Shown here: one piece after another, positions 641 to 15,488 of the stretch | Layout of the letters: each line of letters starts with the position of its first letter | Numbering within the stretch: position 1 is the first letter of the stretch | NCBI RefSeq assembly: GCF_006345805.1 | Contig: NW_021825092.1 | Location: 1-16,668, forward strand | Reading direction: 5' to 3' | Source: Octopus sinensis | Taxonomy: Eukaryota | Length of the DNA: 16,668 bases | Program-made: the position numbers and the translations under genes | The notes under the pieces: model-generated | Told to the model about the DNA's origin: nothing | What the model saw: only the letters and a program-made list of their open reading frames with translations | Database searches by the model: none

Positions 641-1171
641 CGTGACTAACCTTGAAAAGGGCGAAAAAAAAAACATGTTTATTAAACTTTTAGAAAGCGA
701 AACTTCGAAGCTACTGTCAACGTTTTCAGCATAAAAGTTAAATGAATATATATATATATTTATACATCAACACCCCATGTTAGAAATGTCATGTACATAC
801 ACGAACATTCCACACCTTTTGTACAGTCGACACACTCAACCTTCGTATCATATATTAATAGAACACAAAAGGTGGTCAACATGTTACGTATACAATATAT
901 CATCGGCAAAGTGCGAACTCATTCTAGGAGATTTGAAGAAAGTTTCAGAAAAATAGAAGTATTGCTGAAATTGTTAATTCTATAATTACTTGGTGAGAGA
1001 ACATTATGTCAACATATCAAAATGTAGTTGTGTTCCACAGTGTTTGTGAAGCAGAGAAGAGTTCTTATCGGACAGCGGGTTATTTATTTTCATGAACATC
1101 ATTATGGCTACGTCTGTGCTTCTCTTTTTGATTTACTCCAGCGAATGTGAAGCTCTGAACTTTTGAGGATG

Positions 1172-1675
<504 letters not shown>

Positions 1676-1740
1676 CATACGTATAAACTCGTATTGGAAG
1701 ACTTCAATTTCCCCATCCTCAAATGTTCAGAGCTCTACAT

Positions 1741-1892
1741 ATATACAACGGGCTTCTTTCAGTTTCCGTCTACCAAATCCACTCACAAGGCTTTGGTCAG
1801 CCCGAGGCTATGGTAGAAGACACTTGCCCAAGGTGCCACGCAGTGGGACTGAACCTAGAACCATGTGGTTGGTAAGCAAGCTACTTACCACA
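1741..1892 (-). mobile_element. SINE family A 5' half flanked by a 27-bp direct repeat
   Basis: Reverse complement of the family A head through gaagcccg(TA)n. Flanks 1714-1740 and 1893-1919 read catcctcaaatg(t/a)tcagagctctacat (1 mismatch). Confidence 0.9.
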
Positions 1893-2391
1893 CATCCTCA
1901 AATGATCAGAGCTCTACATTCGCTGGAGTAGATCAAAAGAGAAACACAGACGTAGCCATAATGATGTTCATGAAAATATATGATCCGCTGTCCGATAAGA
2001 ACTCTTCTCTGCTTCACAAACACTGTGGAACACAACCAGATTTTAATACATTGACATAATATTCTCTCACCAAGTAATTATAGAATTAAATAAGCATAGT
2101 AAAAAAAAGTTTGTTGCTCAGTATTTCAGAAAAAAAAAAAACCACTCAAAATCTCTCCAAACTGTATTTTCACAAGTGTCACTATAAATCAATATGAATT
2201 GGCGCCAGATTCTCTCTGTGCAAGACAATAACACAATACAGAAGCATTTTGTCAATAATGCTAAATAAATGCATTCAACACATCCCAGACAACAAGGCTA
2301 AAAGTTCACAAAACCATCATCATGACACTGAACGGGAAAGTTTTTCTCGTGACAAAGAACAAAGTGACATTCTTCAACAGCTATACATAAA

Positions 2392-5072: not shown

Positions 5073-5353
5073 TGTTGTTTGTTCCTTCTCGAGCCACGCC
5101 TGGCTCATAAGGGCCGGTTTCCCGGTTTATTTGACGTATAGGTTCCCCACCTGAACGGGACGCCGGTTTGTCGCAGGTGAGCTGCAAGATGCAGGAGGAA
5201 AGAGAGAGAGAAAGTTGTGGCGAAAGAGTCAGCAGAAATTCGCCATTACCTTCTGCCGGAACCGCGTGGAGCTCGCCCAGTCTGAGATTCGAACCCGCGA
5301 TCCCTCGACCGCGAGTCCGCTGCTCTAACCACTAGGCCATGTGCTTCCACATC
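5073..5353 (-). mobile_element. tRNA-derived SINE family C with 12-bp TSD
   Basis: Minus-strand head gtggaagcacatggcctagtggttagagc...gggttcgaatctc contains A box TGGCCTAGTGG and B box GGTTCGAATC. Tail is (AAC)-rich. TSD gattgaacattt at 5061-5072 and 5354-5365. Confidence 0.93.
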
Positions 5354-5529: not shown

Positions 5530-6052
5530 AATAATGATCTCAAATTTTGGCATAAGGCCAGTAATTTTAAGAAAGCATGTAAATTGACCACGTCGATCCC
5601 TCTGCCCAACAGGTACTTATTTTACTGACCCCGCCGAGATGAAAAGCAAAGTCGACCTCGATGTAATTCGAACGCAAAAAGTAATTAGTCGGAGAAAATG
5701 CCTATTTCTTTACTACCCACAAGGGGCTAAACACAGAGAGGACAAACAAGGACAGACAAACGGATTAAGTCGATTATATCGACCCCATTGCGTAACTGGT
5801 ATTTATTTAATCGACCCCGAAAGGATGAAAGGCAAAGTCGGCCTCGGCGGAAATTGAACTCAGAACGTAACGGCAGACGAAATACCGCTGAGCATTTCGC
5901 CCGGCGTGCTAACGTTTCTGCCAGCTCGCCGCCTTATTTCCTTCTTCAAATCGTAGAAATCATCATCATCATCATTCTTTCTGCCAGCTCGAGTCGGAGA
6001 AAATGCCGCTGAGCATGTTGCCCGAAACGCAAACGATTCTATTAGTTCGCTG
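5530..6052 (-). mobile_element. Old SINE family B copy interrupted by a younger family B copy
   Basis: Diverged aaagcaaagtcgacctcg and gctgagcatgttgcccgaaacgc halves flank the insert. 16-bp TSD agtcggagaaaatgcc at 5687-5702 and 5992-6007. Confidence 0.85.
5703..5933 (-). mobile_element. Young full-length tRNA-derived SINE family B
   Basis: Minus strand reads ggcggcgagctggcagaaacgttagc...gagttcaatttcc (B-box-like)...aaagaaata. High identity to the array units at 14455-15169. Confidence 0.93.
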
Positions 6053-6339
6053 GATTATTTATAGAAAAGAATACGAGTGACCGAGTAGCATACATCCATT
6101 CTTTGGTTCTCCTTTTCCGAACAGCGTATGTATATTACCGGTTAAGAAAACCAACTCTAGTACTTCATTAAACTATACTAGTAGTATTTCCAAATATTTG
6201 TAATACCATTAAAAACAATAATGCAAAAAAATTATATGGAGAAACTGTACAAACATTGAACCCCTTCCATATGGAGGAAGAATATCTTCATATATAATCA
6301 TTAAAGAGCAGACGACTAGCGACGAACCAATAAGAGATC

Positions 6340-6789: not shown

Positions 6790-6967
6790 CCTGTGGCCAT
6801 GCTGGAGCACCGCCTTTAGTCGAGCACATCGACCCCATGACTTATTCTTTGTAAGCCTAGTACATATTTTATCGTTCTCTTTTGCCGAACCGCTAAGTTA
6901 CGGGGACGCAAACACACCAACATCGATTGTCAAGCGATGTTGGGGGGGCAAACACAGACACACAAAC

Positions 6968-6998
<31 letters not shown>

Positions 6999-7160
6999 CA
7001 TACGACGAGCTTCTTTCAGTTTCCGTCTACCAAATCCACTCACAAGGGTTTGGTCGGCCCGAGGCTATAGTAGAAGACACTTGCCCAAGGTGCCACGCAG
7101 TGGGACTGAACCCGGAACCATGTAGTTCGTAAGCAAGCTACTTACCACACAGCCATTCCT
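6790..7160 (-). mobile_element. tRNA-derived SINE family A, full length
   Basis: Minus strand has A-box-like TGGCTGTGTGG (7145-7155) and B-box-like gggttcagtccc, and is collinear with 1172-1675. Confidence 0.93.
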
Positions 7161-10432: not shown

Positions 10433-10589
10433 TGGACTCTCCCGTCGAAAACGACGTATGAGTGAGTGTGCAGCTCTTTCCAACGACCCCCACAAATTAT
10501 TTGTTTATAGAAATGAAATATATACATACATACATACATACACATTTATATATATATATATATATATATATACACGCACGCGCACACAC

Positions 10590-10738
10590 CTCTTTCAAAT
10601 TCAAATTCACTCACACCCCATTGGTCGGCTTGAGGCTACAGTAGAAGACATTCTCCCAAGGTGCCGCGCAATGGGAATGAACCTGAAACCATGTGGTTGC
10701 AAGTTGAGCTTCTTAACCAAACAGCCATGCCTTCGCCT
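10590..10738 (-). mobile_element. Diverged SINE family A 5' half
   Basis: ttcactcaca...gaggctacagtagaagacattctcccaaggtgccgcgcaatgggaatgaacc aligns with 7015-7160. Confidence 0.85.
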
Positions 10739-13360: not shown

Positions 13361-13759
13361 TTAATTGTTTCAATCATTGGGCTCCGGCCATGCTGAGTCA
13401 CCATTTTGAAGGGTTTAGTCGAACAAATCAACTACAATGCGTTTTTTTTAAAGTCTGGTATTTATTCTATCAGTCTCTTTTGCCGAACTGCTAAATTACA
13501 GGGATGTAAACAAACCAACACAGGTAATCAAGTGGTGGTGGGTAACAAGCACAAACACAAAGACACACACACACATGTATAGGTAAGTACGTATGTATAC
13601 GACGTGCGTCTTTCAGGGTTCGTTCACCAAATCCACTCACAAGGCTTTCACTGGCCTGGGGTTATAGCAGAAAACACTTTCCAAAGATATGCAGTGAAAC
13701 TGAACCCGAAATCATGTGGTTGGGAAACAGATACTTACCACATAGCCACACGTGCACCT
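13361..13759 (-). mobile_element. Diverged full-length SINE family A
   Basis: Collinear with 6790-7160 (ggccatgctg, tctcttttgccgaac, ccaaatccactcacaaggctt, tgaacccgaaatcatgtgg, cttaccacatagcc). Confidence 0.88.
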
Positions 13760-14289
13760 CAGAAGACTAATTAGTTGGCCTTCTTGAAAGCCTGTTTTCT
13801 CAAATTTTCTCTTCTCTGTTTCCCACATTTATCAATATGTCATCCTCAGTACCCAACTTTTAGCTACACATTTTATTTCCAAATTACATCACCAACTGTT
13901 TTTCCTAGTTAACTTCGAATATTTCTCAGCCAAAACAACACGTTTTTTACATTTAATAATACTTCTATTTAACATATAATAAATTATCCTCAGCAACAAC
14001 TGACATCATCTTGTATAAAATGCAATGTTATTTTAGAACATACATGTTTTATAGACATCACTTTGCATACTTCACTAAGGATAAGTATTTGTTCCACAAA
14101 TATTAAGAGGATCTGTTTTACCTCATGTATTATTTCCATGTTGTTTTTCAAACTTGTGTTTATATATTTATAGACTTTTAGATACATTTTCACTAAACAC
14201 ATTTTCTCATGATTAATGTAATGAAAAACATGTACATGCAATATTTTTATCACTTTGTACGTCTTTGGATGCTTATCACTTTATTACCA

Positions 14290-15333
14290 TCAATACCAAA
14301 TGGCTACAGTCCTTTTCGTCGGCTTTTTTCTCGTATCCGGAAATTTAGTTTCTTCTTTGTTAAACGCCTCCTTTGTGGTATTGCTGCTGATGACATTGTA
14401 GACCAATTCTTGCATAGAAGAGTGGATGGCATTGACAGCATAGTAATATTTGTGAGCTGGCAGAAACGTTAGCGCGCCGGGCGAAATGCTTTGCGGTATT
14501 TCGTCTGCCGTTACGTTCAGAGTTCAAATTCCGCCGAGGTCGACTTTGCCTTTCATCCTTTCGGGGTCGATAAATTAAGTACCAGTTTCGCACTGGGGCC
14601 GATGTAATCGACTTAATCCGTTTGTCTGTCCTTGTTTGTTCCCTCTATTTTTAGTTCCTTGTGGGTAATAAAGAAATAGGTATTTCGTCTGCCGTTACGT
14701 TCAGAGTTCAAATTCTGCCGAGGTCGACTTTGCCTTTCATCCTTTTGGAGTCGATAAATTAAGTTCCAGTTTCGCACTGGGGTCGATGTACTCGACTTAA
14801 TCCCTTTGTCTGTCCTTGTTTGTCCCTCTATTTTTAGCCCCTTGTGGGTAATGAAGAAATAGGTATTTCGTCTGCCGTTACGTTCTGAGTTCAAATTCCG
14901 CCGAGGTAGACTTTGCTTTTCATCCTTTCGCGGTCAATAAATTATGTACCAGTTTCGCACTGGGGTCGATGTAATCGACTTAATCCCTTTGTCCGTCCTT
15001 GTTTGTCCCCTCTATTTTTAGCCCCTTGTGGGTAATAAAGAAATAGGTATTTCGTCTGCCGTTACGTTCAGAGTTCAAATTCCGCCGAGGTCGACTTTGC
15101 CTTTCATCCTTTCTGTCCTTGTTTGTCCCCTCTATGCTTAGCCCCTTGTGGGCAGTAAAGAAAGAAAGAAATATTTGTGGAGGACGAGGTTGATTTTGTC
15201 GAGCCTTTTTCTCCTATCGTTTGATTTCTTCCTTTTCTCTTCTGGTGGTTTTTGGTTCCGATTGTGACGGAACACCGCCACTTGATACGGTCTTAGATTT
15301 TTGTTTCAAATTATTTAGGATATCAGAAAGAAT
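14290..15333 (-). mobile_element. Decayed RTE-clade LINE 3' end, split by a SINE array
   Basis: After removing 14455-15169, the minus strand translates with one frameshift and stops as FETKI*DRIKWRCSVTIG / REKEEIKR*EKKARQNQPRPPQILLCCQCHPLFYARIGLQCHQQQYHKGGV* (stop 14360-14362). DRxxWR and CxxC..F.ARIGL.xH..H are typical of RTE ORF C-termini, from family knowledge. Confidence 0.75.
14455..15169 (+). mobile_element. SINE family B tandem array (one head plus four bodies)
   Basis: Units start at ggtatttcgtctgcc at 14495, 14679, 14862 and 15046 (period 183-184). The last unit has a ~64-bp deletion at ~15113. 10-bp TSD aatatttgtg at 14445-14454 and 15170-15179. Confidence 0.95.
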
Positions 15334-15488
15334 AACATGTACATGATAAATGCTTATCTCTTTATACGTCTGTATACCTAACACTTTATTTCAAGCAATG
15401 CCAAAGATTTACAACCCTTTAAAATCAGCAAATATAATTGAATGCGCATAATTTCCTCTATGTGTTCTCAAATTGGCTGATCTATTAC

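What the first reader, a model, noticed from the sequence alone, without database searches (positions are those of the whole stretch)
5687..6007. SINE family B inserts into itself at the same junction that builds its tandem arrays
Seen: the young copy's 3' end (minus strand ...aaagaaata) abuts ggcattttc of the older copy, which is the homologue of ggtatttc just downstream of the head. Every junction in the 14455-15169 array is the same aaagaaata|ggtatttc. The junction gaaata-gg-tatttc is itself an inverted repeat. Inference: RNAs ending in ...GAAAUAGG(UAUUU) prime reverse transcription at the homologous site of existing copies, and homology-guided 5' joining then gives head-body-body arrays. 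This would be a self-targeting, self-concatenating SINE.
Basis: partly seen in the sequence, partly recalled or inferred. Interest (0 to 1): 0.72.

Follow-up and report, generated by a model that had tools for sequence, protein, structure and literature searches.

The report
Octopus SINE nested at array breakpoint
A young copy of an abundant octopus SINE sits inside an older relative at exactly the base where the same SINE's tandem array joins unit to unit, at the tip of a conserved hairpin. That is real, but whether the SINE homes to itself or its reverse transcriptase stalls and jumps there is not settled.

Summary
At 5687-6007 a full-length SINE-B copy (minus strand) lies inside an old related SINE, flanked by a perfect 16-bp target-site duplication. 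Its tail abuts GGCATTTT, the exact homologue of the GGTATTTCG that follows each unit tail in the 14455-15173 array.

- The nested copy is an ordinary TSD-flanked insertion that kept its own head, plus 56 nt of extra 5' sequence.
- The whole array sits inside one TSD (AATATTTGTG).
- The breakpoint is the first base of the 3' arm of a conserved 13-bp head hairpin.
- The window is octopus DNA.

In 112 kb of Octopus bimaculoides, sister SINEs lie head-to-tail far more often than chance (7 pairs against 0.15 expected). Their junctions fall at consensus positions 1-21, not at this site. One dimer shares a single TSD, and two copies start exactly at the breakpoint.

I favour one-event concatenation by reverse-transcriptase template jumping at the hairpin (about 0.42). 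The nested hit does suggest the site is also a favoured nick site. The genome-wide test could not be run. I rate it a new variant of known SINE-derived tandem arrays, of moderate interest.

The parts
5687..5702 (-). Target-site duplication, copy next to the young SINE's tail. Minus strand reads GGCATTTTCTCCGACT, which is positions 41-56 of the old SINE B'.
   Evidence: Perfect 16-nt direct repeat with 5992-6007.
5703..5935 (-). Young full-length SINE-B copy, from its 5' end AAGGCGGCGAGCTGG (5935) to its tail GTAAAGAAATA (5703).
   Evidence: 91% identity to array unit 1 over 225 nt. nhmmer matches consensus 1-171. The 5' end was defined from O. bimaculoides copies.
5874..5902 (-). Head hairpin of the young copy: CGGGCGAAATGCT / loop CAGC / GGTATTTCGTCTG. 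G41 (5886) is the first base of the 3' arm.
   Evidence: The MFE fold shows a 13-bp stem. Across 29 copies, 84.7% of cells are paired against 31-58% when slid.
5936..5991 (-). 56 nt of extra sequence between the upstream TSD and the young copy's 5' end. It comprises a 14-nt second copy of head positions 8-21 (5978-5991) plus 42 nt that contain (GAT)5 and end in a tail-like GAAGAAGGAAAT.
   Evidence: The 14-nt perfect repeat is at 5915-5928 and 5978-5991; sequence read. It lies inside the TSD pair, so it was co-inserted or arrived later.
5992..6007 (-). Target-site duplication, copy upstream of the insert. It is part of the old SINE B' head.
6008..6053 (-). 5' part of the old SINE B' head (CCAGCGAACTAATAGAATCGTTTGCGTTTCGGGCAACATGCTCAGC).
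   Evidence: Alignment A1 and a 73% direct repeat with the young head (family D2).
5540..5686 (-). Body and 3' region of the old SINE B'. It has the O. bimaculoides-type 3' end ...GCCAAAATTTGAGATCA.
   Evidence: nhmmer matches consensus 50-209 at 5702-5540; blastn 68.7%.
14445..14454 (+). Upstream TSD of the whole array (AATATTTGTG).
   Evidence: Direct repeat AGTAATATTTGTG / AGAAATATTTGTG, at 14442-14454 and 15167-15179.
14455..14678 (+). Array unit 1: head (5'-truncated by about 8 nt, starting at consensus position 9) plus body plus tail.
14679..15045 (+). Array units 2 and 3 (14679-14861 and 14862-15045). Each begins at G41 (GGTATTTCG) and ends in ...GAAATA.
   Evidence: TRF period 184. blastn q41-225 at 94% and 93.5%. 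Variant table.
15046..15173 (+). Array unit 4. q41-108 is identical to unit 1. It then jumps to q171, and ends in the tail GTAAAGAAAGAAAGAAATA. The last 4 nt overlap the TSD.
15170..15179 (+). Downstream TSD of the whole array (AATATTTGTG).

Best explanation
What is shown:
- The feature at 5687-6007 is an ordinary retrotransposition. A full-length SINE-B RNA, plus 56 nt of extra 5' sequence, was copied by target-primed reverse transcription (TPRT) into an old related SINE, leaving a 16-bp TSD.
- The nick lies between C40 and G41, at the boundary between the loop and the 3' arm of a conserved 13-bp hairpin in the SINE head.
- The array uses the same boundary as its unit junction.

What I infer as most likely:
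- The array was made in a single TPRT event. The partner LINE's reverse transcriptase started on one RNA's tail and switched template once inside the body (unit 4).
- Each time it had copied the 3' arm of the hairpin up to G41, it jumped to the 3' end of another, or the same, SINE-B RNA.
- Only on the last pass did it read through the head. The result is head-body-body-body inside one TSD.
- Later DNA-level unit duplication may have added units.
- That the nested insertion also hit this base suggests the hairpin tip is also a favoured first-strand nick site (my estimate about 0.6). This need not be how the array was built.
For: - One TSD, AATATTTGTG, flanks the whole array, and no TSD or second head lies between units.
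- Units 1-3 are equidistant: 173/183, 172/184 and 170/183 identical, with 4, 7 and 7 private changes. They share the same subfamily states, including T5. That fits simultaneous origin from one template source.
- Unit 4 is chimeric. It has 0 of 68 differences from unit 1 in q41-108, but by my reading of the alignment 4 of 52 from the unit 1-3 ancestor in q171-222. The two parts are joined across a 62-nt skip, as expected from a jumpy RT.
- Co-insertion within one TSD occurs elsewhere in this system. The 56-nt extra piece lies inside the nested copy's TSD pair. In O. bimaculoides the X2-X3 dimer (L007 66408-65991) is flanked by TATGCTAGATGGAT and TATACTAAATAGAC, matching at 10 of 14, with only 1-2 nt between X2's tail and X3's head.
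- Head-to-tail neighbours number 7 against 0.15 expected. They are no more alike than random family members, so they are not DNA duplicates.
- cDNA ends recur at this spot. The young L008 copy at 24408-24577 (93% identity) starts at consensus 49/50, which is G41. L008 35930 also starts at 50. Five other truncated copies start at 21, 40, 41, 55 and 64.
- The hairpin is conserved across 29 copies.
Against: - Template jumping does not explain why an independent, TSD-flanked insertion landed on the same base of an older copy. I estimate that chance at roughly 0.01 or less after allowing for the handful of insertions examined.
- No cause is known for a stop exactly at G41. An RT would be expected to pause at the base of a stem, not after unwinding it.
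- Three jumps at the identical base need a deterministic stop or an RNA species that begins at G41.
- Units 1-3 carry an internal T5 (CTATTTTTAG), which should terminate Pol III before the tail. Their template would need read-through or a Pol II origin, or else the units are DNA-level duplicates.
- The cluster of truncation points around the hairpin rests partly on old copies, where a local alignment may simply begin at the best-conserved stretch.
- No second array was available at DNA level.
Confidence: 0.42

Rival explanations
1. C40|G41 is a preferred priming site for SINE-B RNA, perhaps because transcripts from copies embedded at such sites end in ...GAAAUAGGYAUUU and anneal to the nicked bottom strand. 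When the target is a close relative, the 16-nt top-strand overhang (q41-56) anneals to the identical stretch of the new cDNA. The new head and the TSD then disappear and a body unit is added, and repetition builds the array.
For: - The nested insertion proves that TPRT can start at exactly this base.
- Its target B' matches the young copy at only about 10 of 16 positions in the overhang. That would explain why it resolved conventionally, with a head and a TSD.
- A hypothetical RNA 3' end GGUAUUU would pair with the B' bottom strand AAATGCC over 7 positions, one of them a G-U pair (sequence).
- The nested young copy is itself followed by T4 (GGCATTTTC), so its own Pol III transcripts would carry such an end.
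- Counting the array as one event, I count six independent tail contexts for the tail-AAAGAAATA family: the array's own TSD site, the array junction, the nested site, L007 40605, and the two tails on L009. Two of the six are at G41, although G41 sites occur about once per 4-5 kb.
- Private changes of 4, 7 and 7 in units 1-3, and an aberrant unit 4, run in the predicted young-to-old direction.
- L008 35930 starts at G41 and is preceded by a tail-like CAATAAAAAGAAA.
Against: - It rests on one independent insertion.
- It needs three further hits at a single locus.
- Units 1-3 share a Pol III-terminating T5 and are equidistant.
- Unit 4's 5' part is identical to unit 1, while its 3' part differs. 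If unit 4 were the oldest resident copy, both parts should differ.
- In 112 kb of O. bimaculoides none of at least 7 tail-to-SINE junctions is at this site.
- The array junction offers only T3 as a terminator.
- Normal TSDs of this family begin with AATA, so the bare tail, not a trailer, usually does the priming.
- The sequence upstream of L008 35930 is not recognisably a SINE.
Confidence: 0.3
2. DNA-level origin only. A monomer insertion underwent tandem duplication by slippage or unequal exchange, and later unequal crossing-over expanded and homogenised the units. On this view the nested insertion's position is a coincidence.
For: - Units 1-3 share the derived T5, which would disable an RNA template.
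- The published explanation for SINE-derived arrays is unequal recombination.
- An edge unit that escapes homogenisation is typical of arrays.
Against: - The junction joins a complete tail bluntly to G41. Microhomology between tail plus flank (GAAATATTTG) and q43-47 (TATTT) would give GAAATATTTCG without the GG, and that is not what is seen.
- It leaves unexplained both the nested hit at the same base and the two O. bimaculoides copies that start at G41.
- Tandem neighbours in O. bimaculoides are not duplicates of each other.
Confidence: 0.12
3. The array was copied from a multimeric or circular template. Either a head-body-body master gene was transcribed as one RNA, or reverse transcription ran round a 184-nt circular RNA (G41 ligated to the tail) and then switched to a linear RNA for the head.
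For: - There is a single TSD, the junctions are identical and the units are equidistant.
- G41 lies at a loop boundary, where an RNase cut could produce ligatable ends.
Against: - The T5 in each unit would stop Pol III inside unit 1 of a multimeric master.
- Rfam found no self-cleaving ribozyme and no other RNA family hit in the units.
- No other copy of the same multimer was found, and no circular RNA data were available.
Confidence: 0.06

Closest known systems
Tandem-like SINE arrays of the form TSD1-(SINE)n-TSD1 in the blood clam Scapharca broughtonii (Mob DNA 2024, PMC11481361)
   Same: The first unit has a complete head, the following units share one head truncation point, the last unit has the complete tail, and one TSD surrounds the whole array. 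Both are mollusc SINEs with a conserved central domain.
   Different: In the clam, internal units are also truncated at the 3' tail. Here every unit keeps a complete tail, joined bluntly to one base at a hairpin tip. A separate TSD-flanked insertion marks the same base. That paper suggests unequal recombination as one possible origin of such arrays.
SINE-derived satellites of squamate reptiles (Mob DNA 2023, PMC10702118)
   Same: They are tandem repeats of part of a SINE, with a longer terminal unit that reaches the SINE terminus. Short loci have few units.
   Different: In squamates the arrays reach up to about 1000 units, sit near telomeres and are attributed to duplication plus concerted evolution. 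No link to an insertion site or an RNA structure was reported.
End-to-end template jumping by non-LTR reverse transcriptases and the chimeric retrocopies it makes, such as U6-L1 chimeras (PMC4476161) and tripartite chimeras in Magnaporthe (PMC2104539). The R2 in vitro work is from my own knowledge.
   Same: The complete 3' end of one RNA is fused to a 5'-truncated copy of another, and the whole is flanked by one TSD.
   Different: Here donor and acceptor belong to the same SINE family and the switch point repeats at one base, which gives a periodic array rather than a one-off chimera. These papers appeared only in a search list and I did not read them in detail.
Alu insertions into the A-rich linker and poly(A) tails of older Alus, and microhomology-guided 5' joining of L1 (from my own knowledge, not checked here)
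   Same: A SINE preferentially lands in a short motif carried by its own relatives, giving nested and tandem copies. Overhang-cDNA annealing sets the 5' junction.
   Different: The Alu motif is simply the L1 endonuclease's TTAAAA-like site. Here the site GC|GGYATTT does not resemble this family's usual AATA-type targets.
Site-specific non-LTR elements of the R4/Dong clade, with Dong inserting in (TAA)n (from my own knowledge). Dong-R4 is the LINE group with the most recently active insertions in O. vulgaris (PMC13282606).
   Same: The usual TSDs begin with AATA or AATAAT. Several copies abut (ATT)n, (ATC)n or (AGT)n tracts.
   Different: The partner LINE was not identified, and no 3'-end homology was tested. 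This is a lead only.

Membership tests
SINE (Pol III-type, LINE-mobilised short retroposon) | Short, non-coding, many dispersed copies | tested here: met
   The window holds about 225-bp units at two loci. 112 kb of O. bimaculoides holds 36 related copies, 4.8% of the sequence.
SINE (Pol III-type, LINE-mobilised short retroposon) | Variable-length target-site duplications | tested here: met
   A 16-bp perfect TSD and a 10-bp TSD. TSDs of 11-17 bp flank O. bimaculoides copies.
SINE (Pol III-type, LINE-mobilised short retroposon) | Head derived from a tRNA, with a recognisable cloverleaf | tested here: not met
   ARAGORN found no tRNA and Rfam gave no tRNA hit at E<=1. Only box-A-like TAGCACGCCGG and box-B-like GAGTTCAAATTCC are visible by eye. 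The head folds as one long hairpin.
SINE (Pol III-type, LINE-mobilised short retroposon) | 3' end shared with a partner LINE | not testable with these tools
   No octopus LINE sequence was reachable, and the window contains no RT-like ORF.
SINE-derived tandem array / satellite | Head-to-tail repeats of part of a SINE, with the terminal units extending to the SINE's ends | tested here: met
   Period 184, 3.4 copies. Unit 1 carries the head and unit 4 the full tail.
SINE-derived tandem array / satellite | Units more alike within the array than to copies elsewhere (local amplification) | tested here: inconclusive
   Units are 93-95% identical to each other and 89-91% to the young copy. They share a T5 that is absent from four other copies. 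Too few outside copies of this subfamily were available.
Site-specific (self-targeting) retroposon | Most insertions at one defined sequence | tested here: not met
   By my count, three of the four TSD- or flank-defined genomic targets of this family begin with AATA, at unrelated loci. Only one TSD-flanked insertion is at G41. None of at least 7 tail-to-SINE junctions in O. bimaculoides is at G41.
Site-specific (self-targeting) retroposon | Enrichment of insertions at the site over its genomic frequency | tested here: inconclusive
   One or two events out of about six fall at a site present once per 4-5 kb. That is suggestive, but the sample is tiny and was chosen after the fact.
Retrozyme-like circular-RNA retroelement | Self-cleaving (hammerhead) ribozyme in each tandem unit | tested here: not met
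   Rfam at E<=1 found no ribozyme family anywhere in the window.

The most novel reading that the evidence does not exclude
The tip of the SINE's own head hairpin is a homing site. SINE-B RNA guides the LINE machinery to GC|GGYATTT in resident copies, either through a terminator-defined trailer (GGYAUUU) or by its tail (GAAAUA) pairing with the TATTTC of the target's top strand. When the target is a close relative, the break is resolved by annealing of the homologous overhang, so each homing event adds one body unit. That would be a retrotransposition-driven, recombination-independent route from a dispersed SINE to a satellite-like array.
Probability: 0.25. Interest if true: 0.75.

Novelty: new variant of a known kind. 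Interest (0 to 1): 0.48.

Why it matters
How dispersed SINEs turn into tandem arrays and satellites is still explained only in general terms, as unequal recombination. Here the unit boundary is defined to the base. It coincides with an RNA/DNA structural landmark, the start of the 3' arm of a conserved hairpin, and a bona fide TSD-flanked insertion marks it independently. That turns a vague question into two sharp models that make opposite predictions about unit ages, solo copies truncated at G41 and transcript ends. SINEs make up about 11.6% of an octopus genome, and their clustering is extreme. Whichever mechanism is right has therefore shaped a sizeable part of cephalopod genome architecture.

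Tried and rejected
Searches that found nothing:
- Exact-pattern scans for SINE-B 21- to 23-mers in viral, metagenome (twice) and prokaryote genome collections gave 0 hits.
- A full-text search of papers for six SINE-B strings gave 0 hits.
- Word-indexed protein searches with the antisense junction ORF and with a six-frame concatenate gave no hits.
- Exact-protein look-ups of window ORFs and of P0001 and P0012 were not on record.

What worked: the route to octopus DNA was a profile of SINE-A ORFs, then an all-against-all phmmer search with the junction ORF. That gave O. bimaculoides gene models and the loci L007 and L008.

Ideas rejected:
- The tail|AATATTCGTC junction on Logan contig L009 is not a second G41 hit. 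Its flank is not similar to the SINE (154 of 300 shuffles scored as well).
- The sequence upstream of L008 35930 is not a recognisable SINE tail.
- Microhomology between the tail (GAAAT) and the hairpin's 5' arm (CGAAATGC) cannot be the source of the junction. It would retain the loop (GCTTTGC), which is absent.
- The apparent interruption at position 37/39 in L007 40786-40897 is an assembly gap of 10 N.
- An |RRYATTT target motif is too post hoc to use. The window holds 67 such sites, against about 49 expected.
- Protein P0013 may span a tail|q43 junction lacking the GG, but this could only be read at protein level, because the look-ups were exhausted.

Full report
**What the window is.** The window is AT-rich (34.8% GC) and full of microsatellites and short interspersed repeats. 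A profile of ORFs from its commonest repeat (SINE-A) hit an Octopus bimaculoides protein at 81% identity. ORFs from the element studied here hit O. bimaculoides RefSeq models XP_052828027 and XP_052826730/31. The window therefore comes from an octopod, though the species is not determined. In O. vulgaris SINEs make up 11.6% of the genome, and the recently active LINEs include Dong-R4, CR1, L1-Tx1 and RTE (PMC13282606).

**The element.** SINE-B is about 233 nt long. Its true 5' end, seen in many O. bimaculoides copies, is AAGGCGGCGAGCTGGCAGAAACG. It has a box-B-like GAGTTCAAATTCC, a central stretch shared with sister families (GAGGTCGACTTTGCCTTTCATCC...GGGGTCGATAAATTAAGTACC), and a tail ...GGGTAATAAAGAAATA. 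No tRNA is recognised by ARAGORN or Rfam. The head folds into a 13-bp hairpin, CGGGCGAAAUGCU / 4-nt loop / GGUAUUUCGUCUG. Across 29 copies from the window, O. bimaculoides and a Logan contig, 84.7% of cells in that hairpin are paired. The figure is 31-58% when the partner is slid by 1-3 columns. Nine cells carry changes on both sides, and 8 of 500 shuffles reached that number.

**Checking the observation.** Every element of it is present.
- The array at 14455-15173 has period 184, and its three internal junctions all read GAAATA|GGTATTTCG.
- On the minus strand at 5703-5935 a full-length copy ends in GTAAAGAAATA and abuts GGCATTTTCTCCGACT.
- That sequence belongs to an old, diverged relative (B', 69-73% identity) whose head continues at 5992-6053.
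- In alignment A1, ATGCTCAGC|GGCATTTT and ATGCTCAGC|GGTATTTCG align base for base.
- GAAATA-GG-TATTTC is an inverted repeat. It is not a notable fold (z = 0.02). TATTTC is part of the hairpin's 3' arm, and the tail happens to resemble the 5' arm (CGAAAT).

- The finding's coordinates are the two copies of a perfect 16-bp direct repeat. The young copy was therefore inserted by ordinary TPRT, with a 16-nt stagger, and it kept its own head.
- Between the upstream TSD and the young copy's 5' end lie 56 extra nt. They comprise a second copy of head positions 8-21 and 42 nt ending in a tail-like GAAGAAGGAAAT.
- The whole array is bounded by one TSD, AATATTTGTG, and its first unit is 5'-truncated by about 8 nt.
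- Units 1-3 are equidistant. They are 93-95% identical, with 4, 7 and 7 private changes and a single substitution shared by two of them. All three carry CTATTTTTAG, where unit 4, the young copy, an O. bimaculoides copy and a Logan copy have TATG(C/T)TTAG or TGTGTTTAG. That T5 is a Pol III terminator 30 nt before the tail.
- Unit 4 is identical to unit 1 over q41-108. It then skips to q171, and from there, by my reading of the alignment, it differs at 4 of 52 positions from the ancestor of units 1-3.

**Evidence from elsewhere.** Public DNA scans found nothing. Two O. bimaculoides gene models containing SINE-B-derived peptides gave 112 kb of chromosome sequence, loci L007 and L008. These loci show the following.
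- They hold 36 copies of the superfamily, 4.8% of the sequence. Most belong to sister families with other 3' ends, such as ...GTAGAAAAGAATA and ...AAAATTTGAAATCA.
- Seven same-strand neighbour pairs are separated by 25 bp or less, against 0.15 expected (0 of 5000 permutations).
- The neighbours are no more similar to each other than to the consensus. They are independent RNAs joined head-to-tail, not DNA duplicates.
- Their junctions are tail|position 1, 1, 2, 2, 7, 11 and 13, plus one at about 21 read by eye. None is at position 50.
- One dimer (X2-X3, L007 66408-65991) is flanked by a diverged 14-bp TSD matching at 10 of 14, with only 1-2 nt between X2's tail and X3's head. That indicates co-insertion.
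- No ~184-bp array occurs in either locus.
- Two copies begin exactly at G41. A young one (93% identity, L008 24408-24577) is joined to an inverted 3' fragment. Another (L008 35930) is preceded by A-rich sequence that is not recognisably SINE.
- Other truncated copies start at 21, 40, 41, 55 and 64. For old copies, though, the alignment start may only mark where conservation begins.
- The usual targets of the AAAGAAATA-tail family begin with AATA: AATATTTGTG, AATA[A/C]TATAAGGCCTA and AATATTCGTC. They match the last four bases of the RNA. The G41 events (GGYA) do not fit that rule.

**Interpretation.** C40|G41 is a recurrent breakpoint. In about 130 kb I count four independent events: one array, one TSD-flanked insertion and two copies that start there. 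Two mechanisms can place a complete tail bluntly next to G41.
1. Template jumping. The RT ends its copy at G41 and continues on the 3' end of another RNA.
2. TPRT starts at a nick 5' of G41 in a resident copy, and the 5' end is resolved by annealing of the homologous 16-nt overhang.

The array's single TSD, equidistant units, chimeric last unit and truncated head fit the first mechanism in one event. So does the independent evidence for co-insertion in this superfamily. The nested insertion is direct evidence only for the first step of the second mechanism. It is hard to dismiss as chance (about 1 in 200 given a nested hit, and far less per insertion). The poor match between the B' overhang and the young copy neatly explains why that event resolved conventionally. 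The shared T5 argues that at least some units arose by DNA-level duplication or from a non-Pol III template.

My weights are:

| Explanation | Weight |
|---|---|
| One-event template jumping | about 0.42 |
| Homing plus homology-guided joining | about 0.30 |
| DNA-level duplication only | about 0.12 |
| Multimeric or circular template | about 0.06 |

Separately, I put about 0.6 on G41 being a genuinely favoured nick site.

**Comparison with known systems.** The structure matches the TSD1-(SINE)n-TSD1 arrays of the blood clam (PMC11481361) and the SINE-derived satellites of squamates (PMC10702118). Both are attributed, loosely, to unequal recombination. The differences here are complete tails at every junction, a breakpoint fixed at a hairpin tip, and an independent insertion at the same base. 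The element is not a site-specific retroposon, because most of its insertions go to AATA-type sites. It also carries no ribozyme.

**Verdict.** I class this as a new variant of a known kind, of moderate interest.

Noticed in passing
window 1164-1363(-), 1736-1897(+), 6958-7154(+), 10498-10726(+), 13555-13750(+): There are five copies of a second SINE (SINE-A). Its sense strand is the reverse of these hits and reads GGCTGTGTGGTAAGTAGCTTGCTTACC...GGTTCCGGGTTCAGTCCC. Its 3' ends run straight into (TA)n, (TG)n and (GTAT)n tracts, so this SINE appears to seed much of the window's microsatellite load. An ORF from it matches an O. bimaculoides protein at 81%.
   Followed up: partly
window 5192-5340 (-), and a related piece at 504-585: This is a third SINE-like head with clear tRNA-type boxes (GGCCTAGTGGTTAGAGC...GGGTTCGAATC). 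It lies about 200 bp from the 3' end of the old SINE B'. ARAGORN does not call it a tRNA.
   Followed up: no
window 5915-5991: A 14-nt perfect repeat, TTTCTGCCAGCTCG, brackets 49 nt that contain (ATC)5. Read on the SINE strand, this is a stray copy of head positions 8-21 plus 42 foreign nt in front of the young copy, all inside its TSD. It is either debris from template switching at the 5' end or a tiny later insertion with a 14-bp TSD.
   Followed up: partly
window 14220-14315 and 15327-15420: A ~95-bp direct repeat (74% identity) lies on both sides of the array, about 1.1 kb apart. It is another repeat family or an old local duplication, and was not identified.
   Followed up: no
L007 69654-69760: An old SINE-B-like head has (GGTTAG)3-4, a telomere-type TTAGGG repeat, expanded at its hairpin loop. 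There GCTTAGCGG already resembles TTAGGG. A young copy's tail abuts this old copy at about position 21.
   Followed up: no
L008 24408-24641: Two copies lie head-to-head with their tails pointing outward. A young copy truncated exactly at G41 is joined to an older inverted fragment that starts at consensus position 148-149 and has an A10 tail next to (ATC)n(ATT)n. It looks like priming from both strands of one break.
   Followed up: partly
L007 75296, L008 35596, L008 24641, L008 35400-35991: Several SINE-B-type copies abut long trinucleotide tracts, (ATT)n, (ATC)n and (AGT)n. This is reminiscent of (TAA)n-targeting Dong-type LINEs, which are the LINE group with the most recently active insertions in O. 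vulgaris.
   Followed up: no
P0009 (UniRef A0A0L8GQ56, O. bimaculoides, 706 aa): An aminopeptidase-like gene model carries 47 residues of antisense SINE-B translation near its N-terminus. This is either exonisation of the SINE or an annotation artefact.
   Followed up: no
P0013 and P0015 (Logan contigs, run accessions not retrieved): ORFs from another sequencing project read through two or three SINE units in tandem. P0013 may contain a tail|TATTT junction that lacks the GG. This could only be read at protein level.
   Followed up: partly
L007 40786-40798: A 10-N assembly gap lies inside a SINE-B copy, with the same SINE sequence repeated on both sides. It is an assembly artefact that mimics an insertion near the breakpoint.
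   Followed up: yes
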